Of a stretch of DNA of 64,000 nucleotides, positions 19,347 to 46,481 are shown in pieces. The notes under the pieces were generated by a model. The model was not told the origin of the DNA, made no database searches, and saw only the letters and a program-made list of their open reading frames with translations. The stretch lies in NCBI RefSeq assembly GCF_001194135.2, contig NC_068989.1, positions 85,577,268 to 85,641,267 of the forward strand, in the 5' to 3' direction. Every line of letters starts with the position of its first letter. Position 1 is the first letter of the stretch. The translations under genes and the position numbers were made by a program. The stretch is from Octopus bimaculoides. Its lineage: Eukaryota.

Positions 19347-19416
19347 ATGAAAAGGAACAAAATTGTGAAGGACAATCGCTCTCATTCATGTGTCCCAAGT
19401 GGAACCAAACCATTAG
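19347..19416 (+). CDS. DBF4: DBF4 first coding exon (exon begins 19283): MKRNKIVKDNRSHSCVPSGTKPL
   Basis: Acceptor ttcattgtag at 19282, donor ag|GTGAGC at 19417, ATG in ataATGa context; phase 1 matches the next exon. Confidence 0.7.
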
Positions 19417-22400
19417 GTGAGCTGTTATATTCTATCAAGATATCTAGTGGAAGCATGTAGCTTAATGGTTAGGGTATTTGGCTCATGTTCATAAGGTCGT
19501 GAGTTTGATTCCTGGTGGCACATTGTGTCCTTGAGCAAGACACTTTATTTCACATTGCTCCAGTTCACTCAGCTGGCAATTCAAAGGACTAGCCTTGTCG
19601 CATTCTGTGCCACACTGATCTCTCCTAGAACTATGTTAAGGGTATGCATGTTATTTTCACAAGCAGGCTGTTGTGTTGATCAGATCAACTGGGACACTTG
19701 CCATTGTAACCAACAGAGTGCCAGTAATCGAGATTCCTTTTTCAGCCACAGTCATATTTCTAAGAAAGTAATTTTCAAAGTTTGTACACTGCTTTTTTTG
19801 GCTGTAGTAAATTGGTAAGACTGAGAGGCAACTGGATTTAAAATTTTACATACAGCTTGCTCTGCCTGACACATGAGCCACTCCATACAACATAGCCTGT
19901 CTGATAGCCATGTTGTACCTTGTATAACATATCCTCATACTGCACTCTATCAGAAGTTAGTGAGAGGGCCTTTACAAGATTACTTAACCTGCTAGAAATA
20001 GCAGTCACATTTTCATAGTCGTAATCTGGTTTTGGAAAAGAAAGAAAATATTGAATAATGTAGTCCTAGATACTCCTAAGTAAACTGATTAGTCATAGTT
20101 AAAATACATTTGATTAGGATTGACCTGGGGTAAACAACAATGTACTCTGTCTTAGAGCCATGCTGCATTCTCTACAATTGACCTTGTCTGGTAGCCATGT
20201 TACACCCCTACAACATGTCATTTCTGATAGCCATGTTGCACCTTGTACAGCAAACCCTGTACGGTTGCTATACAGTACACCATACAGTGATTCTCCTCCT
20301 TTTATTTAAATTTGCATATGTTAAGTGGTTGTGAACCATCTTCCTGTTTCAGAGCAACATCTTCAGTAACAGCAGCATTACTGAACTAGAATTTATTGAA
20401 CAAGACACTGTCCTGGCTTAGATATTTTCTTTGGGGTTCAAATCATACGAAAGGCAGCTTAACTTTTCATTCTTTAAATGTTAATAAAAAGAAACTACTC
20501 TGATGAAAAGCACCATCCAAACGTGGTCGATGCCAGAGACACGTAAAAAGCACCATCTGGACGTGGTTGATGTAAGTGCCTACTGACTGTGGCACGTAAA
20601 AAGTACCATCCAAATGTATTCGATGCCAGTGCCTGCCTACTGGCTCCCATGCCAGCGACACATAAAAAGCATCCAGTACACTCTCGGAGTGGTTGGCATT
20701 AGGAAGGGCATCCAGCTGTAGAAACCTTGCCAGATCAGATTGGAGCCTGATGCAGCCTACTGGCTTGCCAGTCCTCAGTCAAACTGTCCAACCCGTGCCA
20801 GCATGGAAAGCGGACGTTAAACGAAGACGATGATGATGGCTGTTGTTAAGCTTAGACAATAGCTACCTTTGTTGGGGTTTTAAGGTCACCTCCAAATCTG
20901 CATAGGCAAGGAAGAGGATTGCAGTATTTTCTCTATTGTTTCTTACATAAACATGCAGGAGAGAGTGGGGATGGGAATTTGTAAAGTTCATGCATTTCCC
21001 ATGATGCCACACAGTGGGACTGAACCCAGAACCAAGAGGTTGGGAGGCAAGCTTCTTACCACACAGCCACGCCTTGTTTTTTTGTTTTTAAATTTATTGA
21101 ATTAAAAAAAGAAACTCATATCTTTTGTACCTTGAACTTATTATTTAAATAATGTTTCTATATTGCTCAAAACAAAAGTGTTAATTTAAAATGAAACACA
21201 AATAGTTTTTTATTGTGACATTGAATTGTGTGTTTATGGTTGCTTTTTATCTCCATTGTTTATGAATGGAGAGATTATGTAGTGGGACATTGAGGTTAAC
21301 AATCAGTTCACACTGAAGGCTGCGATCAGATGATTCAGAGCAAAGATTCTCATTCAGTTACAAGTTGTTCAATAGATTGATAGAACTCTTATTCGACATT
21401 ATGTGACCTCTAATTTATTTAATTCTCAAAATTGAACCTTGAATTATCTGTAGATGTCAATGCTGGACATTTTGTCAGGATATTTTCTTTATAATTGTTC
21501 TCTGCAGTACACTCTTTTCTTTCACTTGAATTCATTTAATAATAAGGTTTCCATGCTGGTGCCACATAAAATACACCCAGAATACTCTGTAAAGTGGTTG
21601 GCATTAGGAAGGGCATCCAGCTGTAGAAACCTTGCCAAAACAGACAATTGAAGCCTGGTACAGCTCTCCAGCTCGCCAGCTCCTATCAAACTGTCCAACC
21701 CATGCCAGCATGGAAAACAGATATCAAATGATGATGATGATGTTTCCATTTAAAATAACAGGCCTGGGCATGGCTGCATGCTTCCTAACCATGTGGTTTC
21801 AGGTTCAGTCCCACTGCACAGCACTTTGGGCAATCCTAACAAACTGCTCAGCGTTGCCATCTATAGATAATTCAAGGTTCAATTTTAAGAAGAATTAAGT
21901 AAGTTAGAGCCCTGGGCCAACCAAACCCTTTTGTGGGGATTTGGTATATCTTATTTTAGCAACTATACTTTAAGAACACTTTTCTCTTCTGCTAATTCTG
22001 TTACCTAGATGTCCTAAGTAACAAACTATTAACCACCTCTAAGGGTCCTCTTGAACATTAGAGAAAATCTGTTTCCTGTGTATTCTTATTGTATATTGTT
22101 TCTGTGCATCTGCCACACGAAAAAGTCTACTTTTGCTGTTAACCTTCCTGTGATCCCACTGCACCTCTTATATGTCCACAGTTTGCACTGGGTACATCAT
22201 ATGGAATTCTGCCATTTGTGTCCATTTAGACGTTTCTAACTTTATTTCGATTTCAGCTTCAGGTGAAAGTTGTCTAAATAGCAGAAGAAAGCTTGACTTC
22301 AAAAACAAACTTCCACTTGATGGTAAAAGGATTTATCTTGACTTAAGAGGATTAAAACAGAGGAATGTTGAAGAAAGTTTAAGCAAATTTGGAGCAGTAA

Positions 22401-25400
22401 GTATATCTAACTTGACATTGAATTTCACTCAATCTACATCTTTATGTGAACTGAAATATACTCAGTGTGTGTGTGTACATGTTGGAATTCAGTATGTGTG
22501 GGTTGCAGTTATATTAGTGTATGCCTGTTAGAATTCATTCAGTCTTTTCTTGAATGTATATTGAAATTTGCTTTGTGTGTATCTGTGGAATGTCTACATG
22601 TGTTGTAGACTTACCAGTTCATTTGTCTACAGTACAAATTAAAAGGCCTTCATTATCATCCTATTTAAGTTCTCTCCCCAAACCATTCTTGGATGGCTCT
22701 CTTGTAGTCCCATGTCATCTGAAAGAAGAATACCTTGGTTTTTTTTTCGACATAGATTGGATACATTTTATCATTACACTGGTATTAGAGAGGTTGTCTG
22801 CAGCAGCCAGACTAAAGTATTCCTCTCTACCTATTTGCCAGTATGGTAAAAATAGTTTTACCTCCAATTTGTGTGCTTATATACAATATTCTATATGTGC
22901 TACATGTGTTGAATTGTTTCAAACAGTGTATGCATGTAAGAATTATCAATTTTAAGGGATACTTCACAGTTACTTTTAGGTATTCTTATATAAAGAACAT
23001 ATTCATTTCAGTTCTACATTTAAGAGATGAGGAATTATTTACATTTGATGGATATTTGTCCCCATCTTGTTTGTTGTTAACATAACATTTTGGCTGATAT
23101 ACCATCCAGCCTTCATCTGGTGTCTTGGGGAAATTTCAAACCTGGGTTCTCATTCCTATGGTATTTTTTGATGTTATTATTATTTAAGTCACTGCCTGGT
23201 ATCGAACTTGGAATCTTGGGGTTAGTAGCCTGTGCTCTTAACCACTACGTCATATGCGTTTGAAAGACAAGCTAGTTTTAAAAAAAAGATTTATTTTTTT
23301 AAAATTGCCCACTGGTATATGGTGTAGTGGTTAAGAGCGTAGCCTACTAACCCCAAGATTCCGAGTTCGATTCCAGGCAGCCACCTGAATAATAATAATA
23401 ACATCGAAAAATACCTTAGGAATGAGAACCCAGGTTTCGAAATTTCCCCAAGGCACCTGATGAAGGCTGGAGGGTATATTAGCCGAAACGTGTTGACAAC
23501 AAATAAGATGAGGACAAATATCCGTCAAATGTAAATAATGTTAACATATTCATTTGTTTTNNNNNNNNNNGTGGTGGGGGGGGGCAGTTTTTCCATGTTA
23601 GCCTGGGTTAAACAAACATATATTATTTGAGGCATTATTTTTGCAGCTGGATGCCCTTCTTGCTGTTTTTTTTTTCAAGTAAGGGAGCACTAAATCCTGG
23701 ACAATTTGTTGACAGAGAAATGTCAACGTCACTCTGCACTTAGAGTTTTTGGAGAAGTACAGAGTGTAAATATCCACAAAGACATGTGCATGCATGCACA
23801 CACACACACATTGAATTTAGTACATCCAGTTTGATATTTTATCACTCTCTAATCTGTTGGTCAATAATATAGTGGGACACAGAACCATTTTTTAGATTTG
23901 TGTAAATAGCACACACACACATGACTTCGCCTTTTATTTCCATTTTCTAAATTCCCTTCAAAATATGCTGTCCATTTGAGTTTATAGTGCAACACACTTA
24001 ACCAGGATACTCAAAACCATGTGGTTGTACTGGGAACCTGTTAACCATACAGCCTGCTCATTCCTATACACCTGTATATCCGTATATGTGTGCGTGTGTA
24101 GTTACATTTACTTTTATAATGATTCTATACTTATAGCATTTATGTGTATAAATGTCTTAGTGGGTTGGCTACCATACAGCCAGCCGATAGGTTAATTCGT
24201 GGAGATGTGTATATATTAATTTTTTTTCTCTTTTTCTTTTCAGATCATTGAGAAATTCCTCAGCAAAGAGATCCATTACTTTGTTACTGATCAGTCAAAA
24301 GTAAAAGAGAAAAATGATGATCCAAATGCCTCAGGAAGTCCAAGTGTCTATATGTCAAGCCCATTCAACAGTGGCCAAACTCCATCCCCTTCAACTTTTG
24401 ACAAAAAGGCTCTCTCGGTATGTCTGTTTGTCTTGCATCCACATCTCTCGCAAAGAGATGACTTTGTAACCTCCTGTCTTCTGTTATTATTTTCTCTCTT
24501 TCTGTTATCATTTCCTCACCTGTGCAAACATTTAGATGGTGGCAGTTGTCTGTTTTGACATGGTTTCTACAGTTGGATGCCCTTCCTAGTGACTGGTAGT
24601 AGGCAGAGAGGAAAGTCCCTGCAAACAGGAGACCTGATCTGATTGCTTCAAGAGCCAGGTGATGGGTTAAATCTACCTCCCATAGAGGCAGGCCATGGGT
24701 GGATTGGAATTCAGGGCCATGACAAATACTTGCAAGACATCCAACTGATGGTCTAACAATTTCAACAATCCATCAACCTTGGCTATTATTTCACTTTTGA
24801 CCTTGGAAGGAATTGATCTTAGAATGCAAGAAGCTGGAATAAATACAGCAAGGCATTTTATCCCACATTCTGTCAATTTGTCTGTAGAATAACTGTGTCC
24901 CCCTCCCTTCCATCTCATTAATGGTAAATGTGAAAATGTCAATATTTCCTTAATTGTTCAACACAACTTATGTCATTCTTTGTTTTACCAGGTTACTCGT
25001 GGAAAAGCCATGCTACAATGTGTTAAAATAGATTCTGTTGTAAGTTCATCACTATTCTATTGTCTTTCTCTTTTCCCATTCTGAAATAATGCAATTGGTG
25101 TCTTTATGGGTCATAGAAACACCACTGACCTCGTATCTGTAATGATTATAGAAACTCTAGTGACCTAACACGAAGCTGGACTTGTTAGAGATTAGAATAT
25201 GTTGTGTAACTGCAATACATCATTCTGGCTGCCAACACTTTTTTCTGCAAAATAGGGGTAGTTTATCCTGTTCAGGCTATATTATTAGCATTATTCTGCG
25301 ATTGAGAATTTAAAATCACTTCTTTAACTTTCTAAGACATCTCAACGCTTCTAAAAGCAAACTTCGTTTGTTTGTTTACGTTTATCATAATTTGAATTTA

Positions 25401-28400
25401 ACATTATTAATAATGTTTCAGAGATGTAATATCATGTAAATTACTTCACATCAATGATAAGCTTCGTTAAAGACAGTGGTAAAATGTAGTTACTTTAAGG
25501 CTTAATGTACAAATGCAAAATTATGTTCAATTTTGGGTGTTTGGATATATGATAATAATAGGAAGAGAGGTTGCCAGATATATGAAAATGACAGGAGTGC
25601 AGCAACATAAACTCTTGATGGCAACCCGCCTGAGACTAATTTCTGGTTCTATGATACAAACTTTCTGTTTTCAAGTAATCTAAATTAAAAACTTCCATCA
25701 AAATTTCTTATTTATATTCCAACACTGGCTTAAAAATGACTTATTTTACTAAATCATTTACTTTCAAAATTACCTGAAACGAAGGCAGTGTATTTCAACA
25801 GAAATGTGATAGCAAAAGGTTTAATACCATTCATTCAATTATGAGTTGCTCCTGGAACCAGACTGGTAACAAATAAATCACATACATGTAATGAATCCAC
25901 TGAACTTTGTTATTCTCATGACTTTATTGGTTTGTGCATGTATTAACGATGTTGAGGTATTCTGATAAAGTGAAAAAGATTGGCGGTAGTTAGTGAATTA
26001 AAGTGGTCCCATTTAAATTAATGCCTGTTTAAATGTTGGTTTGATTTTTCTACAGCATCACCTTTACATAATTTTAGAATGTTTCTACGCCATATTGTCT
26101 GTCGATTCTTTATTGCATATAAATTCTTCACCAATGCCCATGACTGTTCAGTAATGACGAAAAGGATATGATCACAAATACAAGCAGTAGAGATGGGGTT
26201 CCTGCAAAGGTTCTCTGAAGTAATGTTTCAGGGTGCTTACCCTGAAGAACAGGGAGCCTCTCCATGTTGAGTCACTACTTTCTTTTCATCGAAAGGTCCC
26301 AGCTTTGGTTCTACAGACATTTTATTCGAATGTTACAAGAAAGTATCACAAGAAGAATTCTTCAAACCAAGCTAACTGGCAGAAGACCTAGAGGTAGACC
26401 AAGATGGTTCAATAATATCCATAGTCTCGCTTGATCCAGCTGGAAAGTGGATGGTTGCTTCTGATTGCACCCTATGGACACAGCGAGTGAAGATGGATGG
26501 ATGGAAAAAATTCTTTATGCCTACCCCATTAAAATGTGTGTGTGTGTGGTACTGGTGGTAAGAGTATAATTTCTCTTCAGTTTGGTCTCATTTTTCTTAT
26601 TATATTTCCTTTTTCTTTTTTAGCCTGAGAATATTGTTGACAAAGCAAGAAAACTTGGAGTCAAGATTGTGCCCTATACAAGTAAAGAAAATATTTATCA
26701 TCATCATCATCATTATTGCTTACATTATAGACGTAGGCATGGCTGTGTGGTTAAGGAGTTTTCTTTCCAACCATATAGTTTTGTTTGCATGGTACCTAGG
26801 GCAAGTGTCTTTGCTATAGCACTGAACAAACCACAACCAGTACCCAGATTAGAACACTTCAAATTTTTCTTGTTCTTGTATTTATTCATGAAAAGCGATA
26901 CATTGTGTCCTTGAGCAAGACACTTTATTTCGCGTTGCTCCAGTCCACTCAGCTGGCAAAACTGAGTAGTACCTGTATGTCAAAGGGCCAGCCTTGTCAA
27001 GCTTAATCTCCCTGAGAACTATGTTAAGAGTACACGTATCTGTGGAGTGTTCAGCCACTTGTACGTTAATTTCACAAGCAAGCTGTACCATTGATTGTAT
27101 CAGCTGGGGACCCCATCGTCATAACCGACAAAGTGCTCCTCCTTTATATTAGTATGATGGTGTCTACCAATGTAATTCTGCTCACAGTAAATTGGTGAAC
27201 TCAAAGCTATGACAGAAGACACTTGCCCAAAGTGCTTAGTAGTGGGATTGAACTGCTTATATACACACAGACACACATAAAAATGCACACATATACATGC
27301 AGCACACAATAGATTTCTCTCAGTACCTGTCTACCAAATCCACTCAAGACTTCAGTTATTCAGGGACTTAGAGTAGAAGACACTTGCCAAAGATGTCTCA
27401 CAAAAAACTTAACCTGAAGCCTTGATGTGTGTTTGTGTATGTTTATAGATATGAATAGTAACGTGTTTGCATGTGTGTGTATGTGTATATAAACATGCAT
27501 ACATGTGCACATATTTCGGATCTATTTTAAAATGGGGGCCACATTTTTCATTAATGTTTTACGTAGTGTTTTTGGTACGGAAAGACTTTCAAACTTCGTA
27601 TACTTATCTATTTTGTGTTATAGAACAGAAAAATATTTTTGTATTCGAATTTGTTTCATGTAAAAAATTGTCTTATTTCGATAATTTCAACCAATCACTG
27701 ACAAGTATTCAGTTGTTTATATTTACTCCTTTGGCTGATTAAGCGATGTAAAGCGTATTTAATCTCCATACCTTCGTTTTATTTGCTTTTTTCATTTTAA
27801 ATTTGCTTTAACCCTAACCCTAAGGTTAGGGTTAGGGTTAATTGTTTCAGAATCGTTTGTTTATGTAGTCGGCACTTAATGTATATCGGCTGAATGGACG
27901 TCAGTGATTGGTTGAAATTACAGAAATACGACAACTTCAACATGGAATAACTTATGGATTTCTTTTTTTTTTAAGAAGACTAAGAGAAAAAGATGTTTTA
28001 TATGACACATTCTACCAGTGTTCCAAGTTTCAAAGGGTTTCGTTAATGAAAAATGTGGCCCCCATTTTAAAAAAGATTCCATATTTCTTTTCCTGTAGTA
28101 CTTTAAAGTAATCTCTGTAATTTTTTTTCCGTAGGTTTAATGAAATGGATCAACAAAGAGAAGACTCTGTTAGAGAATGCCAAAGCAGCTTGTGCATCAA
28201 GCTTAAAAGCCAAAATTGTGGTAAATGTTAAACCCCAGTTCCTTGTGCTTTGTACATGTGCGTGTGAGAAAGTGAGAGTTGGTAACTCCTTGCCTTGATG
28301 TCACATGATAGTTGTAGATGAGTGTTACTATCAGACTTGCAGTGGCCTTCATTTGCAATCTTCTGTAAAACAATGTCTGGTCATGGGGAGATATTATCTT

Positions 28401-29404: not shown

Positions 29405-31243
29405 NNNNNNNNNNNNNNNNNNNNNNNNNNNNNNNNNNNNNNNNNNNNNNNNNNNNNNNNNNNNNNNNNNNNNNNNNNNNNNNNNNNNNNNNNNNNNNNN
29501 NNNNNNNNNNNNNNNNNNNNNNNNNNNNNNNNNNNNNNNNNNNNNNNNNNNNNNNNNNNNNNNNNNNNNNNNNNNNNNNNNNNNNNNNNNNNNNNNNNNN
29601 NNNNNNNNNNNNNNNNNNNNNNNNNNNNNNNNNNNNNNNNNNNNNNNNNNNNNNNNNNNNNNNNNNNNNNNNNNNNNNNNNNNNNNNNNNNNNNNNNNNN
29701 NNNNNNNNNNNNNNNNNNNNNNNNNNNNNNNNNNNNNNNNNNNNNNNNNNNNNNNNNNNNNNNNNNNNNNNNNNNNNNNNNNNNNNNNNNNNNNNNNNNN
29801 NNNNNNNNNNNNNNNNNNNNNNNNNNNNNNNNNNNNNNNNNNNNNNNNNNNNNNNNNNNNNNNNNNNNNNNNNNNNNNNNNNNNNNNNNNNNNNNNNNNN
29901 NNNNNNNNNNNNNNNNNNNNNNNNNNNNNNNNNNNNNNNNNNNNNNNNNNNNNNNNNNNNNNNNNNNNNNNNNNNNNNNNNNNNNNNNNNNNNNNNNNNN
30001 NNNNNNNNNNNNNNNNNNNNNNNNNNNNNNNNNNNNNNNNNNNNNNNNNNNNNNNNNNNNNNNNNNNNNNNNNNNNNNNNNNNNNNNNNNNNNNNNNNNN
30101 NNNNNNNNNNNNNGTGTCATCATCATCATCGTTTAATGTCCACTTTCCATGCTAGCATGGGTTGGACGATTTGACTGAGGACTGGTGAACCAGATGGCTG
30201 CACCAGGCTCCAATCTGATCTGGCAGAGTTTCTACAGCTGGATGCCCTTCCTAACGCCAACCACTCCGAGAGTGTAGTGGGTGCTTTTACATGCCACCAG
30301 CACGAGGGCCAGTCAGGCGGTACTGGCAACGGCCATGCTCAAAATGGTGTTTTTCACGTGCCACCTGCACAGGAGCCAGTCCAGCTGCACTGGCAATGAC
30401 CTCGCTCGAATGTGTTTTCCCATGCCACCAGCACAAGTGCCAGTAAGGTGACACTCGTAACGATCTGCTCTGGCAATGACTATTGTACTGAGGCTGATTC
30501 AGTTACTTCCAAAGGATTTAGTACCACCTGACTGGCTCCCAAAGAAAGTACCATTCGAGCATGGTCATTGCCAGTACCGCCTGACTGGTCCTCATGCCAG
30601 TGGCATATAAAAAGCACCTACTACACTCTCGGAGTGGTTGGCATTAGGAAGGGCATCCAGCTGTAGAAACCTTGCCAGACCAGATTGGAGCCTGGTGCAG
30701 CCTTCTGGCTCACCAGTCCTCAGTCAAACTGTCCAACCCATGCCAGCATGGAAAGCAGACGTTAAACGATGGTGATGATGGTAATTGTTAGATCACTTTT
30801 CATTATGCATGCTTTGGTTTCAGGCTGATTTGGGCTTAAATACCAAATTAAATAGAATTCTCATTTTCTTCACAGTGAAATACTTAAAGAAGCCCTATAT
30901 AAAGTTTGAAGCAATCAACAAACATTATCGTCCAGTCGTAATGGAGTTTACTAGCTGGCCCCACATTAACTTGTCCTCAGCACCAAGCAGCTGTCCCTTT
31001 GATGAGTGGCTGAATTGTGTCAGTGCCACTAAACCTCAGCCAGCGAATAAAGATAATGCCAATGTTCCTGTTGCCTGGTCAGCAGAGTCTGGAGCACCAC
31101 AGAATGCAGCCAATCTAACTCGCAACAACAATAACAATAACAACAACAACAACACGACCAAAAAATGGTAATTGCTTTAGTCTCTCTCTGCTGTGTGTCT
31201 CTGTTGAATTTTTACTATGAATCCAGTTAAAGTGCAGGTTCAT

Positions 31244-31286
<43 letters not shown>

Positions 31287-34200
31287 TACAGTAATCCCTC
31301 GACTATCGTGGGTATTACACTCCAAAAACACCCACGATTGGTGAAAATCTGCGAAGTAGAAACAGTACCATACTGTATATTTTTTTTAATTATTTTTGTA
31401 ATTTGTATATATTTATTTTATTATAAATGCAAAACAAAACCACAGAGGAATCCACGTAAGCTTAGATAACAAACCACAGTAGGTGGACTGCAATATAGCA
31501 AGGGGTTACTCTACATGTATATTAATGCATGTTGTGTATGTTGCTTTATTCGTATATCTATGTAGACATGATTTTGTGTGTGTGTCTTATTTATATATAT
31601 ATTAGTGCAAGCAATTGTAAACACACACACACACACACTCTCTCTCTCCTCTCCCCCTCTCTCTCTCCCTCCCTCTCCAGAAAAAAAAAAAGCTCTTTGT
31701 GTTTTCAAGCCCAGTTGCACTTGCTGTGCAGTATCCGTATGTAAAACCAAACTACACTGATGCAAAGTGCTGTAATATATTTTTTAACAAATTGACCGCA
31801 CACATCAGTTTATATTCCTGGTATTGTAAACACTGTAGGAACAGTAAAGCTTTTGCTTACAGTTAACTTGCACATTTGTCAAGATGACAGAAATGCAAAC
31901 TCAATACTAAGCATGCGTGTGCATGCACACACACAGCCATAGCTTATGTTCTATGTTCATATCTGTCTACGATCAACTTTGCCTTTCATCCATCCAGTCA
32001 CATACTGTAGTTAATTGTTTCCTCCCTTTAGATGTATCTGTTAAGAATCACTTATTATTATTATTATAAATATTTTCCTTTCTTTCCTTGTAGCACACTC
32101 AGTCAACAGGTTGCATCACAGAAGGTCCCTGGGCGGCGTCTAGTGAACTGGGAGAGAAGGAAGCTTGCAGAGAAGAAACTTCGTCAGGGTTTCTGTGAAT
32201 GTTGTGATGTTCGTTTTGATGATGTTAAAAAGGTAATTTTTGTTCAATGTATGTACATACATATTTGTTGTAGTGAAAATGGTACTCCCCTTTCCATGTG
32301 ACAAAGTGGTATGTTTGTCTTTGTACTTCAGTCCAGTGGTTCCCAACTGTTTTTTACCTGTGGATACCCTTTAATTCTGATTTTTACTCCAGGGCACGGA
32401 GGAACCTCATAGCCATTCTATATTTTAAAATATCCCCTTATATTTTTATAATTAAATGTTATAAGGAATTGTATAAAATAAATTGTCAAAGTATTGTGTC
32501 TGTTGTAGAAATATAAACAATTCATAGCACAGAAACTTTAACAATGAAATTTTGTATGGACCCTGATTGATAACCACTGTTTTAGTCCTTAAAAATTCTA
32601 AAATATACGATTGTGGCCTAAAGTTTGGCACATAGGTTTGAAAATTAGAATTTTTATATTAAATGCCCAAAGTTATATTTAATTTGCAGCATATTATTAC
32701 TTGGCCAAAAGTTTGGAACATAATTCTGAAAATTAGAATTTTTATATTAAATGCCCAAATATATAGGTGCAGGAGTGGCTGTATGGTAAGTAGCTTGCTT
32801 ACCAACCACATGGTTCTGGGTTCAGTCCCACTGCGTGGCACCTTGAGCGAGTGTCTTCTATTATAGTCTCGAGCCGACCAAAGCCTTGTGAGTGGATTTG
32901 GTAGACGGAAACTGAAAGAAGCCCATCGTGTATATGTATATTTATGTTTGTGTGTCTGAGTTTGTCCCCCAACATCGCTTGACAACCGATGCTGGTGTGT
33001 TTACGTCCCCGTAATTTAGCGGTTTGGCAAAAGAGACCGATAGAATAAGTACTAGGCTTAAAAAGAATAAGTCCTGGGGTCGATTTGTTCGACTAAAGGC
33101 GGTGCTCCAGCATGGCCACAGTCAAATGACTGAAACAAGTAAAAGAGTATATATGTTTTACATATTTGAATCAAACTGTGCATGAGCATATTTTTAATTT
33201 TTTAAAAGAAATGTTCCAAACTTTTGGCCACAACTGCTTAATGAATTATCCATTGTAATTCTTTGTTTTTTTGTTTTTTTGTTTTTTTATCTCCTTCCCA
33301 CCAACAGCACCTTAATTCCACTGAGCATTGTGCATTTAGAAAGAATGAAGCTAATTACAAGCAGCTAGACAAACTGATAGATCATGGTAGAGCTATCCAT
33401 CAGTTTGTTGAGAATGTTGTGTCTGAAATGGTGTCATCATCTGATGACAACAGGTCTGTATCACCATTTACTCTTCAGATATGTATGTACGCATTTATAC
33501 ACCTTCACAGATATGTATACATAAATGAAGATGCATAAACATACACACACACACACATACACATGAACATGGAAACTGGTACGAATCATAGCCATCAACA
33601 GGGTAGCATGGAGAAAGAGAAAGTTTATTTTGTGCCATCTTGCATTAAGTAGAAAATAAAATATAATATATATATATATATATATATAATTTTATATAAA
33701 GGGCATTAACTGTGTAGTAATGCCTCGCGCTTCGAGGGACTAAATAAACCAAAAACTACCAAACAATAAGCAACATATTTCAGTAAATATGTTGCTTATT
33801 TTTTGGTAGTTTTTGACTTATTTAGTCCCTCGAAGCGTGAGGCATTACTACACAGTTAATGCCCTTTATATAAAATTATTTATATTTATGAAAAAATGAC
33901 GAATTTTTTTCATTACGAAATTTTTTTCATTATGAGGTTTTTTTCACGCTGACTACTTGATAAATTCTTATAAAGAATTTATCCTATATTATATTATATT
34001 ATATATATATATATATATATATATTGGAAATATGCTGTGTGTGAGAAGACCCGGCAAGCCAAGTGAGACCATAAACCATGACCTTTGCCAGGGGTGTAAC
34101 CAACCAACTTCTGCATACCTTTCCTTCATTGGACACTAACCTCTGCTTGCGAAATCGAAATCAAACCAAATTCGACAACTGGCACCCATGCCAGTAGAGC

Positions 34201-37200
34201 TCTAACAGCACCATCCAAGTGTGATCATTGCCAGAGCAGCTGTCTGCCTTCTGTGCTGGTGGCACATACAAAGCACCATTTGAGCGTGATCATTACCAGC
34301 ATCGCCTTACTGGCATGTGAAAAAACATTCGGGCAAGGTTGTTGCCAGTGCCGCTAGACTGGCTCCTGTACAGGTGGCATGTTAAAAATACCATTTGAGC
34401 GTGGCTGTTGCCAGTACCACCTGACTGGCACGTAAAAGCACTCACTACACTCTTGAAGTGGTTGGCATTAGGAAGGGCAACCAGCTGTAGAAATCTCTGC
34501 CAGATCAGATTGAAGCCTGGTGCAGCAATCTGGTTCGCCAGTCCTCAGTCAAAGATGCAGTCATGGCTCTAATGCTGAGAAGTTTGCTTCTCAACCATAT
34601 GGCTTTGGGTTCAGTTTCATTGTAAGCCTTGGTTGGCCAATGTCTAGCAAATGGATTTTGTAGCTGGAAACTGTGAAGTCCATTGTGTGTGAATGTTTAA
34701 TATATTTGGATGGTTTAGATCAATTTATTTGTTGGTGCAAATGTTTTTGGTACAGAAAACTCATTTTACCTTCTTACTGCTATTCAGCTGTGAAATAAGA
34801 GTAGCCATGTCAGTATCTTGTTCGAGGGACATAACCCAATTACATTGGTATGATCAGAACTTACAACCATTTTGTCAGTAGATCAACACTTTAACTCAAC
34901 GTTATTATGAATGTAAATAATATTTGTGACTAAACGTGATGTATCTTGTGACCATTTTTTTTTTTTAATTGTTAAATTTTGTTTTTTGTAGCGAACGAGA
35001 TTATGAATTCTCTGAATCAACAGACAAAGTGATGCTACTTTCTTTGAAAAATTCTAGCTCAGATGCTCAAGAAACCAAAAGACAGTCTGAAAAACATTGT
35101 CATTCCATAACAGTGTATTCACTCTCTTCCTGTGATGTCTCCATAGAAGATGTTGCTACAAAGAACCCATTGATGAAAGAATCTGATGCTCAGTCACTGG
35201 CCTTAGAAAATCCACAAACTCCATTGAAGAAAGTTTCTCAAATTACAAAGAAGTCTTCAGAAAATTCTTGGAAAAGTCCTACTCGAAGTCCATTTAAATG
35301 TTTGTTTAATTCACCTAGTCGCTTGGATCGTCATTGCAATGATAAATCTTCACTTTGTAATAAACAGGCCAAACAGGGTGCTGTTTCATTGTCGGCTATG
35401 ACTGCTAAGGCAGAACCTTTAATTTCACCTTCAAAACCCTTAGAATTTCCAAACAAAATAAAAAGACATTTATCAACCCTGCAAAACGACATCCCACCTG
35501 ACAGTACTGCTCCTAGTAAGTCATTAAAAAATTCAGAACAGGAAAATTACAAACCTTATCTAAATTGTCTTCCACCACAACTAGAAAAGTTCCCAATCCC
35601 CAAATGTAATAAAGCACCAAAGAGTGAAAAACATGCTTGTTTGAGTGAACAGCAAAAGACCATAAAATCCCCTGTTGGCAATGTATGCCTTAATCTATCA
35701 CCACCAGTTCTGGAGAAGTGGGATAAATTAACAACAAATCGTTCTCCAGAAAATAGCCCAGAAGCCAATCACACTGTTCAGGTTAAGCGCAGCTTTCGTT
35801 CATCCTCCCACAAGAAATCGCAATCTAAACGTCAGCGTTTAGTCAAGCTTGGAGAAAAATGGCAGGTTTTGAGCCAACAGAGTGTGAAGAAGATATTGTT
35901 TAATGATGAATCACCTGAGTCATTCATAGGTTTCCATCCTCAGGAAATCTTTAAGAGTGATTATTCTTCAGATATTTCTTTTGAAACTGTTTCTGAAGTA
36001 CTTCTTACTGATCATTCTGATTTCGAATGGACTTTAGGTAACAGTGATGGCCCTTTCAGTGAGCCGTCCTCACAAACAGCTGGTGGTCACCGAACATCAT
36101 TCTCTTGGGATTCAGTACAAGAAGCTTGTCCTAATCATGAAGTCTCAGTTCGCCATAGTCCAAATACAGAAAAGAAATCCTCTCCTTTGACTCAAATTCC
36201 TGAAGGTGGCAGTACTTACACCTGTTCTCCTACAGAATCTGTCACCAGGCCCAAGTCTACTTCTGTTCCAAATTCTTCACATTTGTTGAATGAAGATTCT
36301 CTTGATAAGCCTGAAACCACATCTGACCAGAAACTTTATGGTAAGTCAGTAAAATATCCTACAGATGCTAGTCTCCAACACACTTCACCAATTAGTATCC
36401 CTGTTCAGAGTTTTCCGACTCCTCTTATCCAAGACATACAGTTTCCTACACATCTAAATTTTCAGAATCTGGACTCTGTTGCATCTTCAGTTTATAATTT
36501 TAATACTGTAGAAACTCCTTTCCCTTCACAGGTACCACCTACCTCAATCAACAATCTGTCGTGTACTGACATTGGCTGTCTACCAAACTCTACTGCCATT
36601 TCAACTCTACAGTCATTTCAGATCTTCTCACCAGTATTTTCCTGTGAAGACTCTGAACTTCCAACCATGCCATCAGTGTCTAATCAGGTCCAATTGCCTC
36701 AACATGTTGCCGACTTCAAGTCTCAAGACCAAAATATCTCAGAAGACAGTCATGCAGCTGTAGACTTCCAAAACCTCATGCCTCCTACTGTAACTAGTAT
36801 AAACGAACAAGCATTCACAACCGCTTCCCCTTTTCAATCTAATGAGGCTCAGCTTCCATTGAATTCTACTGCAACCTATGATCCGCTACCTGTATTAAAC
36901 TTTGAAAGTTCATTTAACTTACCTGTGCAAAATTTCAATATGTTACCAAATCTTGTAACTGCTGTTGAAGTAAACACTTCATTTTCACCATTATCAACAA
37001 TACTTACTGCCCCTCTGACAGCTGAAACCAATTTCTCACCAAGTATTTCTACAGAATTACCTCTCCAATCTCAGTGCGACTCTGCACAGGATGTTGGCGC
37101 TGATATTGAGCAAATATCTGACACTTCTGCTGCAGTACCAGATTGTTTATCTGATAATGAGGCACATACACAAAATGTCAGTAATGTAGATCATCAACAT

Positions 37201-38145
37201 CCGCCAGTGCAAGTGACGGAGCTAGCTGCTTCATCTTCATCATCTTCAAGCTTCTTTGACTCTTCTGCTAGCTCAGAGCTAAATCCATCACTAACTTCAG
37301 AACAACGAGAGGTTTCACCGGTTATCGGTTTTGTCTCGTTATCTAACTTTGCAACATCACACATTGAAGATTGTGGAATGTCAGTTCGTCGTGGTTTCAG
37401 AATTCAACCATCCGTGCTATCTCATTCAACAGAATCATCATCAAAGTTGGCAAAATCTGTCACACAGAAGTCTAAGCCAAGTAAAAAACTCTGTGGTTTT
37501 GTTACTGATTGCCAGGACACTAAACAAACTATAAACAGTAGCTCGGTCCCTCTAGTAATACAGTGTGATTTACTGTCTGATTACAAAAGCTCTCAGTATA
37601 GTAGTTCATGTTCTTCAGATCCTCAGGTGTCTAATAGCACCAGCACCTCCAAAAGTGAAAGTGATACAACTGACTCCTTGGTTAAGCTAGCTGCGGACAA
37701 CACAGAAGATGCTGCATCAGATGAGACTGTAGCAACTTCAGACTGGAATGCTTTAAAGAACGACAGTTATGCTGATGTCAAAGACAGCGGCTTTCTCAGC
37801 ATTGAAGAAATAACGCCTAAAAAATCTCCCATGTTAACTGATTCTAAAAGCAGTGAATTTTCCAAAAAGTTTTCTGCCCTCGCCAAACCATGTTCAGTGG
37901 TACTGGAAAAAACAGATTTGCTTCTGACTGGTTTCTCACACAAGGCTCTTGACAAACAGAACATTTTTTCAGTTAAACGAGCTAACAGTACACTGAGCAA
38001 GACTCCAGAAGCAGTTTCAAAGCCAAGACTTCTAAAACGTCTATCAGACAGACACAAGACGTTTCGGTTAGACTACATACCCAGCGGTAACACGAATCGT
38101 AGGTTGACACCACGTATGTCTACCTACAAGACACGGTGTAAATGA
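19347..38145 (+). CDS. DBF4: DBF4/ASK/Chiffon-family CDC7 kinase regulatory subunit, 11 coding exons, about 1440 aa
   Basis: Motif N (PLDGKRIYLDL...KFGAIIEKFLSKEIHYFVTD), TRGKAML, NIVDKARKLGVKI, motif M (LKKPYIKFEAINKHYRP...WPHIN...CPFD) and motif C zinc finger (GFCECCDVRFDDVKKHLNSTEH). All GT-AG junctions are phase-consistent (4323 nt) if the 16-nt exon is used. Confidence 0.93.
22257..22396 (+). CDS. DBF4: DBF4 exon, start of motif N (BRCT-like)
   Basis: SGESCLNSRRKLDFKNKLPLDGKRIYLDLRGLKQRNVEESLSKFGA; tttcag acceptor (alternative at 22262) and GTAAGT donor. Confidence 0.92.
23009..23257 (-). mobile_element. tRNA-headed SINE (family F) with hammerhead-like tail, left member of inverted pair
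   Basis: Reverse complement of 23314..23542; head gcatatgacgtagtggttaagagc...gttcgatacc; degenerate hammerhead core. Confidence 0.85.
23314..23542 (+). mobile_element. tRNA-headed SINE (family F) with hammerhead-like tail, right member of inverted pair
   Basis: A box TGGTGTAGTGG, B box GTTCGATTCC, and tail CACCTGATGAAGGCTG...TAGCCGAAACG. Confidence 0.85.
24244..24417 (+). CDS. DBF4: DBF4 exon: IIEKFLSKEIHYFVTD...DKKALS
   Basis: Strong tttctttt-cag acceptor and GTATGT donor; 58 codons, phase 0/0. Confidence 0.92.
24992..25039 (+). CDS. DBF4: DBF4 exon: VTRGKAMLQCVKIDSV
   Basis: ttttaccag acceptor and GTAAGT donor; contains the conserved (S/T)RGK.(L/M) element. Confidence 0.9.
25625..25830. 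mobile_element. Old, degenerate relative of the piggyBac-like MITE at 3862
   Basis: Shared internal blocks (aaattaaaaacttccatc, ttattttactaaa, tcaacagaaat) and right end agcaaaaggtttaa. Confidence 0.55.
26624..26681 (+). CDS. DBF4: DBF4 exon: PENIVDKARKLGVKIVPYT
   Basis: Long pyrimidine tract plus tag acceptor and GTAAAG donor; matches the DBF4 N(I/V)L..A..WGVKI motif. Confidence 0.9.
27517..28082. mobile_element. MITE with ~38-bp terminal inverted repeats and an internal telomere-repeat hairpin
   Basis: Left ATCTATTTTAAAATGGGGGCCACATTTTTCATTAA versus right TTAATGAAAAATGTGGCCCCCATTTTAAAAAAGAT. Confidence 0.8.
28135..28220 (+). CDS. DBF4: DBF4 exon: (S)LMKWINKEKTLLENAKAACASSLKAKIV
   Basis: ttttttttccgtag acceptor (phase 1) and GTAAAT donor (phase 0). 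Confidence 0.85.
29108..29123 (+). CDS. DBF4: Candidate 16-nt DBF4 microexon: IKQTK
   Basis: tatag acceptor and GTAATT donor; the best phase 0-to-1 exon I found to bridge 28220 to 30876. Confidence 0.5.
30118..30350 (-). mobile_element. RTE LINE 3' UTR/tail (family E), minus copy
   Basis: ggaagggcatccagctgtagaaac...ggacgttaaacgatgatgat tail family; inverted relative to 30551..30780. Confidence 0.8.
30551..30780 (+). mobile_element. RTE LINE 3' UTR/tail (family E), plus copy
   Basis: Same family; ends in a (GAT)n tail about 95 nt upstream of the motif M exon. Confidence 0.8.
30876..31167 (+). CDS. DBF4: DBF4 exon with motif M and a poly-Asn tract
   Basis: KYLKKPYIKFEAINKHYRPVVMEFTSWPHINLSSAPSSCPFDEW; ttttcttcacag acceptor and GTAATT donor. 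Confidence 0.93.
31289..31511. mobile_element. Tigger/pogo-type MITE
   Basis: TA-flanked ends CAGTAATCCCTCGACTAT and ATATAGCAAGGGGTTACTC(TA), which are imperfect TIRs. Confidence 0.6.
32094..32232 (+). CDS. DBF4: DBF4 exon, first half of the motif C zinc finger (GFCECC)
   Basis: ttctttccttgtag acceptor (phase 2) and aag|GTAATT donor. Confidence 0.93.
32334..32579. mobile_element. hAT (Charlie-like) MITE
   Basis: CAGTGGTT...AACCACTG termini; degenerate 8-bp TSD cttcagtc / ttttagtc. Confidence 0.7.
32769..33150 (+). mobile_element. Near full-length family-B SINE with 3' module
   Basis: Best-preserved copy of the gagtggctgtgtggtaag... family. Confidence 0.85.
33308..33453 (+). CDS. DBF4: DBF4 exon, second half of the zinc finger (HLNSTEH...NYKQLDKLI)
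   Basis: cccaccaacag acceptor (phase 0) and ag|GTCTGT donor (phase 2). Confidence 0.9.
33686..33879. repeat. Near-perfect 194-bp palindrome (fold-back element)
   Basis: Arms of about 95 bp with roughly 4 mismatches around a CAGT loop at 33781-33784. Confidence 0.95.
34030..34560 (+). mobile_element. RTE LINE 3' UTR with internal tandem sub-repeats
   Basis: agacccggcaagccaagtgagaccataa matches the 3' UTR of the RTE fragment at 7836-8040 and continues into the family-E tail. Confidence 0.8.
34992..38145 (+). CDS. DBF4: DBF4 giant terminal coding exon (1051 aa, Ser/Pro/Thr-rich, probably disordered)
   Basis: Uninterrupted 3.15-kb ORF; ttttgtag acceptor is in phase 2, matching the upstream donor; TAA at 38143-38145. 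Confidence 0.9.
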
Positions 38146-39149
38146 CAGCAATGTTAATGATTGGATAGACTATGGTGTGATGGGTAAAGATGGAGTGTGA
38201 TTAACCTATGTGGCATTATGGGTAAACTGCAGGGCGTGTGTGGCAGTGTGGATAGGTGACGTAATTGTGTGGTGGTATGGTTAGATTGTGGGCAACTATA
38301 TGAGGGTAGATAGAACTGGCAGGTAGCAGTGGAACATGTTAGTCTGATTAGATATCTGGATATGCTGATTTCCCTACTACCCATCAATAACCCTGTCTGT
38401 TGATAAGCACTTTGATGGTTTGTGGTTGGTCTGGGAGGATAGATATTGACATAACTGAGTAGATTGATTGTACTTATTAATGTAACAGTGTCTGTGTATA
38501 CAGTATTGTGGTCGATCCAGTTGTATATAGACAGGTATATTGGTAGTGATTGACCTGTACATGTAGACAGACACAAATGGAGTGAAAAAGAGAAAGAGAC
38601 TGTTCCTAACATGTTTATCAGGATCACCCCTCCCCATTTATTGCTGCTGGTTTTCACAAATATAATCACAAGGATATCTCCATTGTAATTGTTCTTGTTG
38701 TTTGGCAGTGTCCTGGGTGGCTGTTAATATCTCCATAATGAAATATGCTGATTAACATTTCTTAAACATTTACTTGATTCCTCATCAACTAGCTCGTGTT
38801 AGGTATTTAAATATTTCCACTAAATAACTTAATACTAATTAGCAGTATTCAATTCAATTTTTTTATTTTTTTTTTTTTTATTGTAGTGTTGTCAAGGTTA
38901 CAAATGTCAGCCCATCACTGCATTAAACGACCTCTGGGTTCCAGATGTAATTTTTTTGGGGGGTGGGGGGGTAGTATGGAGGGCATTCTTTCTTTGAATG
39001 AGAATCTATGAATAAGCCTGCAAAATGGGTTGAAATTGGGTTGTGGTACTTGCTCCCCACTGAAGTTTCCATGGCAAATAATTAGCCAATTATAGAGGTT
39101 TTTACCACTCCTAAGGAAATATAATTCTGAAACTGAAGTAATGTGTCAA

Positions 39150-46434: not shown

Positions 46435-46481
46435 TTAGAAGAACTGTGACCCCCTCCATAACATCTCACCGATTAAACAAT

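What the first reader, a model, noticed from the sequence alone, without database searches (positions are those of the whole stretch)
34992..38145. DBF4 with a ~1050-aa single-exon C-terminal extension (Chiffon-like architecture)
Seen: after the zinc finger the frame continues through a 3.15-kb exon, giving about 1440 aa in total. Established: human DBF4 is about 670 aa. Drosophila Chiffon is about 1700 aa, and its long C-terminal part has a CDC7-independent role, nucleating a Gcn5 acetyltransferase complex. Inference: this lineage may have independently grafted a second function onto DBF4. I see no recognisable similarity to the Chiffon C-terminus, so convergence is as likely as homology.
Basis: partly seen in the sequence, partly recalled or inferred. 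Interest (0 to 1): 0.7.

Follow-up and report, generated by a model that had tools for sequence, protein, structure and literature searches.

The report
Octopus DBF4 with long disordered tail
The 3.15-kb exon is the real last coding exon of the octopus DBF4 gene (the activator of the replication kinase CDC7); it encodes a roughly 1050-residue tail predicted to be unstructured, kept in octopuses, argonauts and cuttlefish-type decapodiforms, and its best-conserved patch looks like the chromatin-reader (LEDGF/HRP2) docking motif already known from the tail of human DBF4, so it is more likely a stretched ancestral tail than a newly grafted second function.

Summary
Observation confirmed. Window 34992-38145 (+) is one open exon. 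It has a pyrimidine-tract/AG acceptor whose phase matches the upstream zinc-finger exon. A 10-exon GT-AG model in the window gives a 1443-aa DBF4; the window is Octopus bimaculoides.

The same giant last exon is present in Argonauta and in a decapodiform genome contig. A 5.4-kb cuttlefish-type contig, read as a spliced transcript, joins the DBF4 core to the tail in one ORF.

The tail is not neutral. dN/dS is about 0.27 overall and 0.02-0.12 in the islands. About 12% of residues lie in 7-8 short islands conserved between octopods and decapodiforms. The rest evolves fast, and AlphaFold2 predicts no fold.

A profile search of 1.84 billion proteins found only cephalopods plus one unidentified sequence (P0009), which also lies on a ~980-aa exon. 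No insect Chiffon was recovered.

The strongest island reads helix, acidic linker, FxGF. That is the published grammar of LEDGF/HRP2-binding motifs, which human CDC7-DBF4 carries.

The "independently grafted second function" idea is neither supported nor excluded. This is a new variant of a known kind, of moderate interest.

The parts
19347..19416 (+). DBF4 exon 1 (ATG, MKRNKIVKDNRSHSCVPSGTKPL)
   Evidence: Resembles the Argonauta and cuttlefish N-termini; a gt donor follows. The assignment rests on a short match.
22263..22396 (+). DBF4 exon 2 (start of motif N / BRCT-like region)
   Evidence: tblastn with Argonauta P0003; AG/GT model.
24244..24417 (+). DBF4 exon 3 (motif N region)
24992..25039 (+). 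DBF4 exon 4
26624..26681 (+). DBF4 exon 5
28135..28251 (+). DBF4 exon 6 (3' boundary uncertain; assembly gap in the next intron)
   Evidence: N run seen
30876..31167 (+). DBF4 exon 7: motif M (KKPYIKFEAINKHYRPVVMEF...CPFD) plus a poly-Asn run
   Evidence: matches motif M of human DBF4 4F99_B
32094..32232 (+). DBF4 exon 8: first half of the DBF zinc finger (GFCECCDVRFDDVKK)
33308..33453 (+). DBF4 exon 9: second half of the zinc finger (HLNSTEHCAF...)
34992..38145 (+). DBF4 exon 10: terminal coding exon, 1051 codons plus TGA; Ser/Thr/Pro-rich tail predicted to be disordered
35275..35328 (+). Conserved island SPTRSPFKCLFNSPSRLD: cluster of three CDK-consensus sites ([ST]Px[KR])
35833..36033 (+). 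Main conserved island (QRLVKLGEKWQVLSQQSVKKILFNDESPESFIGF ... ETVSEVLLTDHSDFEWT); dN/dS about 0.02
35875..35934 (+). Candidate LEDGF/HRP2 TND-interacting motif (TIM/IBM): predicted helix QQSVKKILF, acidic linker NDESPES, FIGF
   Evidence: motif grammar from PMC9987994 and PMC7337902
36883..36936 (+). Conserved island PLPVLNFESSFNLPVQNF (function unknown)
37777..37830 (+). Conserved island VKDSGFLSIEEITPKKSP: matches the DSGxxS pattern, which I recall as the beta-TrCP phosphodegron consensus, followed by a TPKK CDK site
   Evidence: the functional reading is inference
37885..37914 (+). Conserved island KPCSVVLEKT (function unknown)
38020..38079 (+). Conserved basic C-terminal island KPRLLKRLSDRHKTFRLDYI (function unknown; a colinear but weak counterpart exists in P0009)

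Best explanation
The exon is the terminal coding exon of the Octopus bimaculoides orthologue of DBF4, the regulatory subunit of CDC7 kinase. It encodes a ~1050-residue C-terminal tail that is predicted to be intrinsically disordered and acts as a string of short docking and regulatory motifs, not as a folded second domain.

Shown here: the exon is spliced in frame to the zinc-finger exons. The same one-exon tail (about 1030 aa in Argonauta, 1270-1320 aa in decapodiforms) exists in Argonauta and in decapodiforms. It is under purifying selection, and that selection is concentrated in 7-8 islands that make up about 12% of the tail.

Inferred: the strongest island is a TND-interacting motif of the LEDGF/HRP2 type (amphipathic helix, acidic Ser-rich linker, FxGF). 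It would tether the CDC7-DBF4 kinase to PWWP readers of H3K36-methylated chromatin, as reported for human CDC7-ASK. Other islands would make the tail a phospho-regulated scaffold: a cluster of three CDK-consensus sites, and a DSGxxS element followed by TPKK. The cephalopod tail would then be an expanded version of the ancestral animal DBF4 tail, grown by insertion of fast-evolving linker sequence on both sides of the old motif.
For: Gene identity and exon connectivity. The NCBI model P0001 joins the exons.

Conserved gene structure: in Argonauta L006 the tail is one exon (15358-18447). In decapodiform L007 the zinc finger lies on two exons and is followed by one exon at 10085-14050. The cuttlefish-type contigs L008 and L009 show the same cag|C phase-2 acceptor.

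Transcript evidence: contig L005 (5370 nt) holds a single ORF of 1704 aa that includes the BRCT-like region, motif M, the zinc finger and the tail. I read it as a spliced transcript because the homologous exons are spread over more than 13 kb in Octopus.

Selection: dN/dS (Nei-Gojobori) is 0.27 against another Octopus species (dS 0.24) and 0.26 against Argonauta (dS saturated). It is 0.02 for tail aa 301-375 and 0.09 for aa 901-975, and 0.2-0.8 elsewhere. Nucleotide identity is 90.8% in the CDS, 80.6% in the intron and about 87% in the 3' flank.

Island structure: 128 of 1050 residues lie in islands that are 67-86% invariant across octopods and decapodiforms; only 11% of residues are invariant elsewhere.

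Disorder: the AlphaFold2 model of the whole tail has mean pLDDT 29.9 and no secondary structure. Pfam finds no family and the PDB sequence search gives no significant match. TRF finds no tandem repeat inside the exon, and no dispersed repeat family of at least 80 nt overlaps it.

Motif: [SE]xFxGF occurs exactly once per tail and is invariant in all cephalopods and in P0009. It appears in only 0.9% of composition-matched shuffles. AlphaFold2 on the island alone predicts a helix QQSVKKILF directly before NDESPES-FIGF. This fits the published grammar of an obligate alpha-helix with F/V/L/I, an acidic linker, and an FxGF that is essential for the LEDGF/HRP2 TNDs. CDC7-ASK is listed there with two such motifs (PMC9987994; consensus S/ExFxGF in PMC7337902). 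FxGF-LEDGF-domain binding also operates in Drosophila (PMC6877644). The tunicate Clavelina DBF4 (P0008) ends ...DDLIMLLNSSTRDSLLGSEFLGFESA, which has the same grammar.
Against: The motif assignment rests on a short pattern plus conservation. No HMM-level similarity to vertebrate DBF4 tails was found.

The linker between the predicted helix and FxGF is 7 residues, against the 8-16 quoted in PMC9987994.

The helix prediction has only moderate confidence (pLDDT about 70) and comes from a 5-sequence alignment. With a shallow alignment, AlphaFold2 can also miss real folds.

I did not verify that Octopus encodes a LEDGF/HRP2 orthologue with a TND.

The conserved block extends about 35 residues beyond FxGF (ETVSEVLLTDHSDFEW). 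At least three other islands have no assigned function, so most of the conserved information in the tail is unexplained.

Direct transcript evidence for Octopus itself was not available. The protein search with the island alignment returned nothing, not even the cephalopod proteins themselves, so that negative result carries no weight.
Confidence: 0.6

Rival explanations
1. Chiffon-like bifunctional gene. The tail has a CDC7-independent job, such as nucleating a histone-acetyltransferase or other chromatin complex. It may even be made as a separate polypeptide, as Chiffon-B is in Drosophila.
For: The overall size and layout resemble Chiffon, with a DBF4 core of about 390 aa followed by more than 1000 aa (PMC9796610). 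Several islands conserved since the octopod-decapodiform split have no known DBF4-related function. A TIM would in any case link the protein to the transcription and chromatin machinery (PMC9987994).
Against: The profile search recovered no insect protein, and neither Pfam nor PDB matched. No folded domain is predicted. The gene has 10 exons, whereas Chiffon has a single coding exon (PMC9796610). Even among insects, Gcn5 binding was detected only in Diptera (PMC9796610). The cuttlefish-type contig carries core and tail in one ORF. Contigs that begin near the tail exon simply contain intron sequence, so they give no sign of an internal transcript.
Confidence: 0.12
2. Mostly dispensable filler. 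The tail is a tolerated low-complexity expansion whose length has no function of its own, and only the ancestral motifs matter.
For: About 88% of the tail has only 11% invariant residues between octopods and decapodiforms. Several 75-codon segments have dN/dS of 0.6-0.8. Composition is 17% Ser, and total disorder is predicted.
Against: The reading frame is kept open over 1030-1320 codons in every coleoid examined. Overall dN/dS is 0.27, and most linker segments lie well below 1. Island order is maintained in all of them. TRF finds no tandem repeat in the exon, and no dispersed repeat of at least 80 nt overlaps it. This rival overlaps with the best explanation; the two differ only in whether linker length matters.
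Confidence: 0.2
3. Annotation or assembly artefact. The long ORF belongs to a different gene, or is a 3' UTR or intron read-through wrongly fused to DBF4.
For: NCBI names the product 'serine-rich adhesin for platelets', and its model lacks the N-terminal exons. An assembly gap lies inside the gene. One related public model (P0006) is clearly chimeric.
Against: The splice sites are phase-compatible. The same junction is present in Argonauta and in cuttlefish-type genomic contigs. A cuttlefish-type contig carries the zinc finger and the tail in one ORF. A 1058-codon ORF in 39% GC DNA cannot arise by chance, and there is purifying selection on the frame.
Confidence: 0.02

Closest known systems
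Human DBF4 / ASK (DBF4 homolog A), regulatory subunit of CDC7
   Same: Motif M and the CCHH DBF zinc finger align to the solved human fragment, and zf-DBF scores above Pfam's threshold. Both proteins have a tail after the zinc finger. CDC7-ASK is reported to carry TIM/IBM motifs with FxGF that bind the LEDGF TND (PMC9987994, PMC7337902). The octopus tail has one canonical ExFxGF preceded by a predicted helix and an acidic linker.
   Different: The octopus motif sits in the middle of the tail, not near the C-terminus (the C-terminal position in human is from my memory and was not checked here). The first motif residue is E in octopus, whereas ASK has S (PMC7337902). HMMER detects no similarity between the tails.
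Drosophila Chiffon (Class III insect DBF4; Chiffon-A plus the Gcn5-binding Chiffon-B)
   Same: A DBF4 core in the first ~400 aa is followed by an extension of more than 1000 aa. Total length is comparable (1695 aa against 1443-1670 aa). The extension is carried on one large exon and contains a few conserved motifs within otherwise divergent sequence (PMC9796610).
   Different: The profile search recovered no insect protein; a direct alignment was not possible because no Chiffon sequence could be retrieved. The entire chiffon CDS is in one exon, whereas the octopus gene has 10 exons. Gcn5 binding and separate A and B products are shown for Diptera only (PMC9796610) and are untested here.
Drosophila JIL-1 kinase C-terminal domain binding JASPer (LEDGF-domain protein)
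   Same: In an invertebrate, a kinase complex is tethered to a PWWP chromatin reader through a conserved FxGF motif in a disordered C-terminal region (PMC6877644). This is the mechanism proposed here for cephalopod CDC7-DBF4.
   Different: It is an unrelated kinase and the motif lies on the catalytic subunit itself. This is an analogy of mechanism, not homology.
Tunicate DBF4 (Clavelina lepadiformis P0008, Phallusia mammillata P0007)
   Same: These were the only named invertebrate DBF4 proteins recovered. Clavelina ends with the same grammar of helix, acidic linker and FLGF.
   Different: They are only 488-553 aa long. Phallusia has no FxGF. Neither has the other cephalopod islands.

Membership tests
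DBF4 / Dfp1 / ASK family (CDC7 activators) | Motif C: CCHH DBF-type zinc finger | tested here: met
   Pfam zf-DBF scores 53.9 bits (cut-off 24.8) on the joined exons 8 and 9. It aligns to human DBF4 4F99_B residues 80-134.
DBF4 / Dfp1 / ASK family (CDC7 activators) | Motif M (proline-rich CDC7-binding segment) | tested here: met
   LKKPYIKFEAINKHYRPV...CPFD aligns to human DBF4 4F99_B residues 9-48, domain E=0.0024. Pfam Dfp1_Him1_M reaches only 13.1 bits, below its cut-off of 25.
DBF4 / Dfp1 / ASK family (CDC7 activators) | Motif N (BRCT-like domain near the N-terminus) | tested here: inconclusive
   Pfam BRCT scores 16.0 bits in Octopus and 18.5 bits in the cuttlefish-type protein, both below the cut-off of 21.3. 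The region is well conserved among cephalopods.
DBF4 / Dfp1 / ASK family (CDC7 activators) | Binds and activates CDC7 | not testable with these tools
   Requires biochemistry.
Class III (insect) DBF4 / Chiffon | C-terminal extension that roughly doubles the protein's length | tested here: met
   1051 of 1443 aa lie after the zinc-finger exons. Chiffon is 1695 aa (PMC9796610).
Class III (insect) DBF4 / Chiffon | Sequence similarity to the insect extension motifs or the Chiffon-B (Gcn5-binding) region | tested here: not met
   A profile of six cephalopod tails searched against 1.84 billion representatives returned only cephalopods and P0009 at E<=0.001. This test is indirect. I assume, but did not verify, that insect Chiffon proteins are in that library, and no Chiffon sequence could be retrieved for a direct profile-profile comparison.
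Class III (insect) DBF4 / Chiffon | Binds Gcn5 and nucleates a CHAT-type complex; separate A and B polypeptides | not testable with these tools
   Needs IP-MS, yeast two-hybrid, western blots or ribosome profiling.
Proteins carrying a LEDGF/HRP2-type TND-interacting motif (TIM/IBM) | FxGF, consensus (S/E)xFxGF | tested here: met
   ESFIGF in octopods, ESFTGF or EPFTGF in decapodiforms, EKFEGF in P0009. It occurs once per tail and appears in 0.9% of shuffles. Consensus from PMC7337902.
Proteins carrying a LEDGF/HRP2-type TND-interacting motif (TIM/IBM) | Acidic, Ser/Thr-rich linker upstream of FxGF (8-16 residues) | tested here: inconclusive
   The linker NDESPES has the right composition but is only 7 residues after the predicted helix end (PMC9987994).
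Proteins carrying a LEDGF/HRP2-type TND-interacting motif (TIM/IBM) | Short amphipathic alpha-helix with F/V/L/I upstream of the linker, embedded in a disordered region | tested here: met
   AlphaFold2 on the island predicts a helix QQSVKKILF with block pLDDT about 74. The whole tail is otherwise predicted disordered. Confidence is moderate because the alignment is shallow.
Proteins carrying a LEDGF/HRP2-type TND-interacting motif (TIM/IBM) | A cognate TND/IBD-containing PWWP reader exists in the same organism and binds the motif | not tested
The literature reports the interaction mode as conserved in animals (PMC6877644).

The most novel reading that the evidence does not exclude
The cephalopod DBF4 tail is a second functional module, analogous to Chiffon-B but evolved independently. 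Through its conserved islands it would assemble a CDC7-independent chromatin or transcription complex, possibly as a separately translated product. That would make 'DBF4 plus a chromatin-scaffold tail' a recurrent invention in protostomes. Alternatively, the long tail with these islands is ancestral to a wide group of lophotrochozoans, as the unidentified P0009 hints, and the published 'insect-specific' Class III needs redefinition.
Probability: 0.12. Interest if true: 0.7.

Novelty: new variant of a known kind. Interest (0 to 1): 0.35.

Why it matters
The literature read here sorts DBF4 proteins into fungal, animal and insect classes and treats the long C-terminal extension as insect-specific (PMC9796610). 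Coleoid cephalopods have an equally long extension that is conserved and under selection. It is unrelated in sequence to Chiffon as far as HMMER can see, and public databases label it wrongly ('serine-rich adhesin for platelets', 'PXDN', 'uncharacterized').

If the central island is a LEDGF/HRP2-type TIM, then tethering of the replication kinase to H3K36me readers would predate the split of protostomes and deuterostomes. It would then be a conserved feature of animal DBF4 tails. The well-delimited cephalopod islands also give a short list of candidate motifs to test.

This is a useful correction and a testable hypothesis. It is not a new kind of system.

Tried and rejected
1. Protein search with an alignment of the DBF4 N-terminal cores, meant to list named molluscan and insect DBF4 proteins with their lengths. 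The candidate list saturated at 8000, probably because of the poly-Asn and Lys-rich words, and only two tunicate proteins were returned. The question of whether long tails are the norm in molluscs could therefore not be answered.

2. Protein search with the island alignment. It gave zero hits at E<=10, not even the cephalopod proteins themselves, so the result is uninformative.

3. Attempts to obtain a Chiffon sequence for direct comparison. The supplements of PMC9796610 are not held and PMC6362396 is not held. Only the indirect test was possible.

4. The primary papers on ASK-LEDGF (PMC2804203 and 10.1038/ncomms8968) are not held. The motif grammar was taken from PMC9987994, PMC7337902 and PMC6877644 instead.

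5. Identifying the organisms behind SRR26493809 (P0009), SRR11869394, SRR8281664 and ERZ21867824 by text search gave no paper.

6. PDB sequence search with the island gave only a chance-level SH3-like match, E=0.26. I rejected it.

7. Looking for an internal transcript of the tail in the ~4-kb Logan contigs. They start in the upstream intron, so they are genomic or unspliced, and give no evidence for a separate product.

8. Rfam on the whole window gave nothing. Repeat searches found no tandem repeat and no dispersed repeat of at least 80 nt inside the exon.

9. The minus-strand ORF 37767-38057 (96 aa) lies inside the conserved + strand CDS and has no support. I treated it as chance.
Full report
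**1. What is in the sequence**

The + strand carries an open frame of 1058 codons from 34969 to 38145. Apart from artefacts caused by a run of Ns, no other ORF in the window exceeds 171 aa. The window has 27-44% GC, so a frame of this length cannot be chance.

The upstream exon encoding the second half of the DBF zinc finger ends AACAG|gtctgt at 33453 and leaves two bases of a codon. The large exon supplies the third base, giving ...SSSDDN-S-ERDYEFS. The stop codon is TGA at 38143-38145.

**2. Gene identity and full model**

The tail is 100% identical to an NCBI protein of Octopus bimaculoides (P0001, 1221 aa). That model joins the motif-M exon, both zinc-finger exons and this exon, but it lacks the N-terminal exons and is misnamed 'serine-rich adhesin for platelets'.

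Using the Argonauta hians orthologue (P0003, 1420 aa) I located all upstream exons and a plausible first exon at 19347. I then built a 10-exon model, all GT-AG, of 1443 aa.

The joined zinc-finger exons score 53.9 bits for Pfam zf-DBF, against a cut-off of 24.8. Motifs M and C align to the crystallised human DBF4 fragment 4F99_B. The BRCT-like motif N is below Pfam's threshold.

**3. Conservation of the architecture**

In Argonauta the tail is also a single exon (L006 15358-18447). In a decapodiform genome contig the zinc finger is again split over two exons and followed by one exon of about 1320 codons (L007 10085-14050). Two cuttlefish-type contigs that contain the upstream intron show the same cag|C phase-2 acceptor.

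A 5370-nt Logan contig (L005, SRR8281664) carries one ORF of 1704 aa. It runs from the BRCT-like region through motif M and the zinc finger to the end of the tail. In Octopus these exons are spread over more than 13 kb. I therefore read L005 as a spliced transcript, which shows core-to-tail connectivity in a decapodiform. I have no direct transcript for Octopus itself.

**4. Selection**

Against a second Octopus species (genomic contig L001, colinear with window 34711-39920), Nei-Gojobori dN/dS over 1041 codons is 0.27 (dS 0.24). Against Argonauta it is 0.26, with dS saturated.

The value varies strongly along the tail. It is 0.02 for tail residues 301-375 and 0.09 for 901-975. It is 0.6-0.8 for residues 1-225 and 376-450 in the close comparison.

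Nucleotide identity to L001 is 90.8% in the CDS, 80.6% in the upstream intron and about 87% in the 3' flank.

Between octopods and decapodiforms, 128 of 1050 residues (12%) fall in 7-8 islands that are 67-86% invariant. Only 11% of the remaining residues are invariant.

For scale, the N-terminal core is 64-66% identical between Octopus and Argonauta and the tail about 50% (48% by BLASTP, 52% in the alignment). Against the cuttlefish Acanthosepion pharaonis the core is 56% identical, and against the decapodiform tails the tail is about 30%.

**5. Nature of the tail**

The tail is 17% Ser and rich in Thr, Pro and Lys. Pfam finds no family in it. TRF finds no tandem repeat inside it, and no dispersed repeat family of at least 80 nt overlaps it, although SINE-like repeats fill the introns. 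Rfam finds nothing in the window.

AlphaFold2 with the six-sequence alignment gives mean pLDDT 29.9 and no secondary structure at all. The alignment is shallow, so this is supportive rather than conclusive. Together with the island pattern, it fits an intrinsically disordered region carrying short linear motifs.

**6. Relatives outside coleoids**

I searched a profile of the six cephalopod tails against 1.84 billion representative proteins. It returned the cephalopods and one further protein, P0009 (983 aa, E=2.6e-7), and no insect, vertebrate, bivalve or gastropod protein at E<=0.001.

P0009 lies on a genomic-type contig (L004, SRR26493809, organism unknown) as one exon that begins after a tttcag acceptor. 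It has no Pfam domain.

P0009 shares the main island with 35-36% identity (pairwise E=5e-12 to 5e-14). It also has colinear but individually insignificant counterparts of the PVLNF and RLLK...F(R)LDYI islands.

So a ~1000-aa tail exon carrying this island is not confined to coleoids. I cannot say whether P0009 comes from Nautilus, another mollusc or another phylum. Two capped protein searches meant to list molluscan and insect DBF4 proteins failed for technical reasons.

**7. Mechanism**

The best-conserved island reads ...KLGEKWQVLSQQSVKKILF-NDESPES-FIGF-HPQEIF...ETVSEVLLTDHSDFEWT.

The pattern [SE]xFxGF occurs exactly once in every cephalopod tail and in P0009, always at this aligned position. 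It appears in only 0.9% of composition-matched shuffles of the octopus tail.

AlphaFold2 on the island alone gives mean pLDDT 58 and pTM 0.22, so it predicts no compact fold. It does predict a helix QQSVKKILF immediately before the acidic linker and FIGF, plus two further short helices.

This matches the published grammar of TND-interacting motifs: an obligate alpha-helix presenting F/V/L/I, an acidic Ser/Thr-rich linker, and an FxGF that is essential for the TNDs (integrase-binding domains) of the H3K36me readers LEDGF and HRP2. Human CDC7-ASK (ASK is DBF4) is listed among the proteins with two such motifs that bind LEDGF (PMC9987994; consensus S/ExFxGF in PMC7337902). The same FxGF-LEDGF-domain mode tethers JIL-1 kinase to JASPer in Drosophila and is described as conserved across animals (PMC6877644).

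Among the few other DBF4 proteins I could retrieve, that of the tunicate Clavelina ends ...DDLIMLLNSSTRDSLLGSEFLGFESA, which has the same grammar.

I therefore propose that this island docks CDC7-DBF4 onto a LEDGF/HRP2-type reader, and that the cephalopod tail is an expanded ancestral DBF4 tail. This step is inference. The linker is one residue shorter than the quoted range, I did not confirm an Octopus TND protein, and no binding data exist.

Other islands suggest phospho-regulation. One is a cluster of three CDK-consensus sites (SPTR-SPFK...SPSR). Another is DSGFLS(I/V)EE(I/L)TPKKSP, which matches the DSGxxS pattern that I recall as the beta-TrCP degron consensus, followed by a CDK site; DSGxxS appears in 3.3% of shuffles. 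These readings are weaker, and three islands remain unexplained.

**8. Comparison with Chiffon**

Chiffon is 1695 aa. Its first 400 aa form the DBF4 core, and residues 1243-1695 bind Gcn5. The whole CDS lies in one ~5-kb exon. The A and B parts appear to be produced separately by an unknown translational mechanism, and Gcn5 binding could be shown only for Diptera (PMC9796610).

The octopus protein resembles Chiffon in size and layout only. The gene has 10 exons. The profile search found no insect protein. No fold is predicted, and nothing indicates a separate product.

I could not obtain a Chiffon sequence for a direct profile-profile comparison. Remote homology of the extensions is therefore not excluded.

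**9. Verdict**

It is a new variant of a known kind. The DBF4 papers I read treat long extensions as insect-specific (PMC9796610), and a text search for DBF4 with octopus returned only three papers, none with either term in its title or abstract (I did not open them).

Interest is moderate (0.35). The most novel reading still open is an independent second module, or an ancient lophotrochozoan long-tail class; I give it about 0.12.

Noticed in passing
window 30876-38145 (NCBI model P0001): The public protein for this locus is named 'serine-rich adhesin for platelets' and starts at an internal Met in the motif-M exon (1221 aa). It omits six upstream DBF4 exons that are present in the window. The name appears to reflect the 17% Ser composition rather than homology.
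   Followed up: yes
window about 29405-30110: A run of Ns (assembly gap), preceded by a poly-T tract, lies in the intron between DBF4 exons 6 and 7. The exon-6 donor chosen at 28251 adds residues (VVNVKPQFLVL) that have no counterpart in Argonauta. This part of the model may be wrong, or a small exon may be hidden in the gap.
   Followed up: partly
window about 31120-31150 (exon 7): A run of ten Asn codons (NNNNNNNNNN) lies between motif M and the zinc finger. It is absent from the Argonauta and cuttlefish-type proteins.
   Followed up: no
window 46419-46850 (+): An intronless ORF encodes a core histone and has an H2B-type sequence (Pfam Histone, 81.8 bits). It lies about 8 kb downstream of DBF4.
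   Followed up: partly
window 30117-30412, 30545-30785, 32784-32953, 40120-40278, 42700-42855, 44002-44301, 53007-53165, 59565-59873: Families of interspersed SINE-like repeats (80-96% identical, in both orientations) occupy the DBF4 introns and flanking DNA. They include an inverted pair only 321 nt apart at 30118-30288 and 30610-30780. None lies inside the tail exon.
   Followed up: no
window 61173-61488: Two 153-nt direct copies at 100% identity, 163 nt from start to start. This is either a very recent tandem duplication or an assembly artefact.
   Followed up: no
P0006 (Acanthosepion pharaonis, named PXDN): This public model is chimeric. A peroxidase fragment (PF03098) is fused to the DBF4 N-terminus, one core exon is missing and the C-terminus is wrong.
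   Followed up: partly
P0013 vs P0014 (cuttlefish-type transcript-like contigs; L005 is the contig of P0013): The two ORFs differ by a 31-aa insertion (VHKRWQLQERLGNAVLNCKHGSKENLKRQDE) just before the BRCT-like region. This suggests an alternative exon or a retained segment. Both ORFs also begin about 38 codons upstream of the likely true Met (MKTGKIVKENQP).
   Followed up: no
L004 (Logan SRR26493809), P0009: A protein of unknown origin is encoded on one 2.95-kb exon. It shares the main DBF4-tail island and has about 165 further residues after the HFDYI motif. It is very rich in SPxK/TPxK CDK-consensus sites, with 17.
   Followed up: partly
window 38146-39920: The 3' flank of the gene is 86-87% identical to the other Octopus species, higher than the intron at 81%. 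Candidate poly(A) signals lie at 38922, 39285, 39635 and 39886. A long conserved 3' UTR is possible.
   Followed up: no
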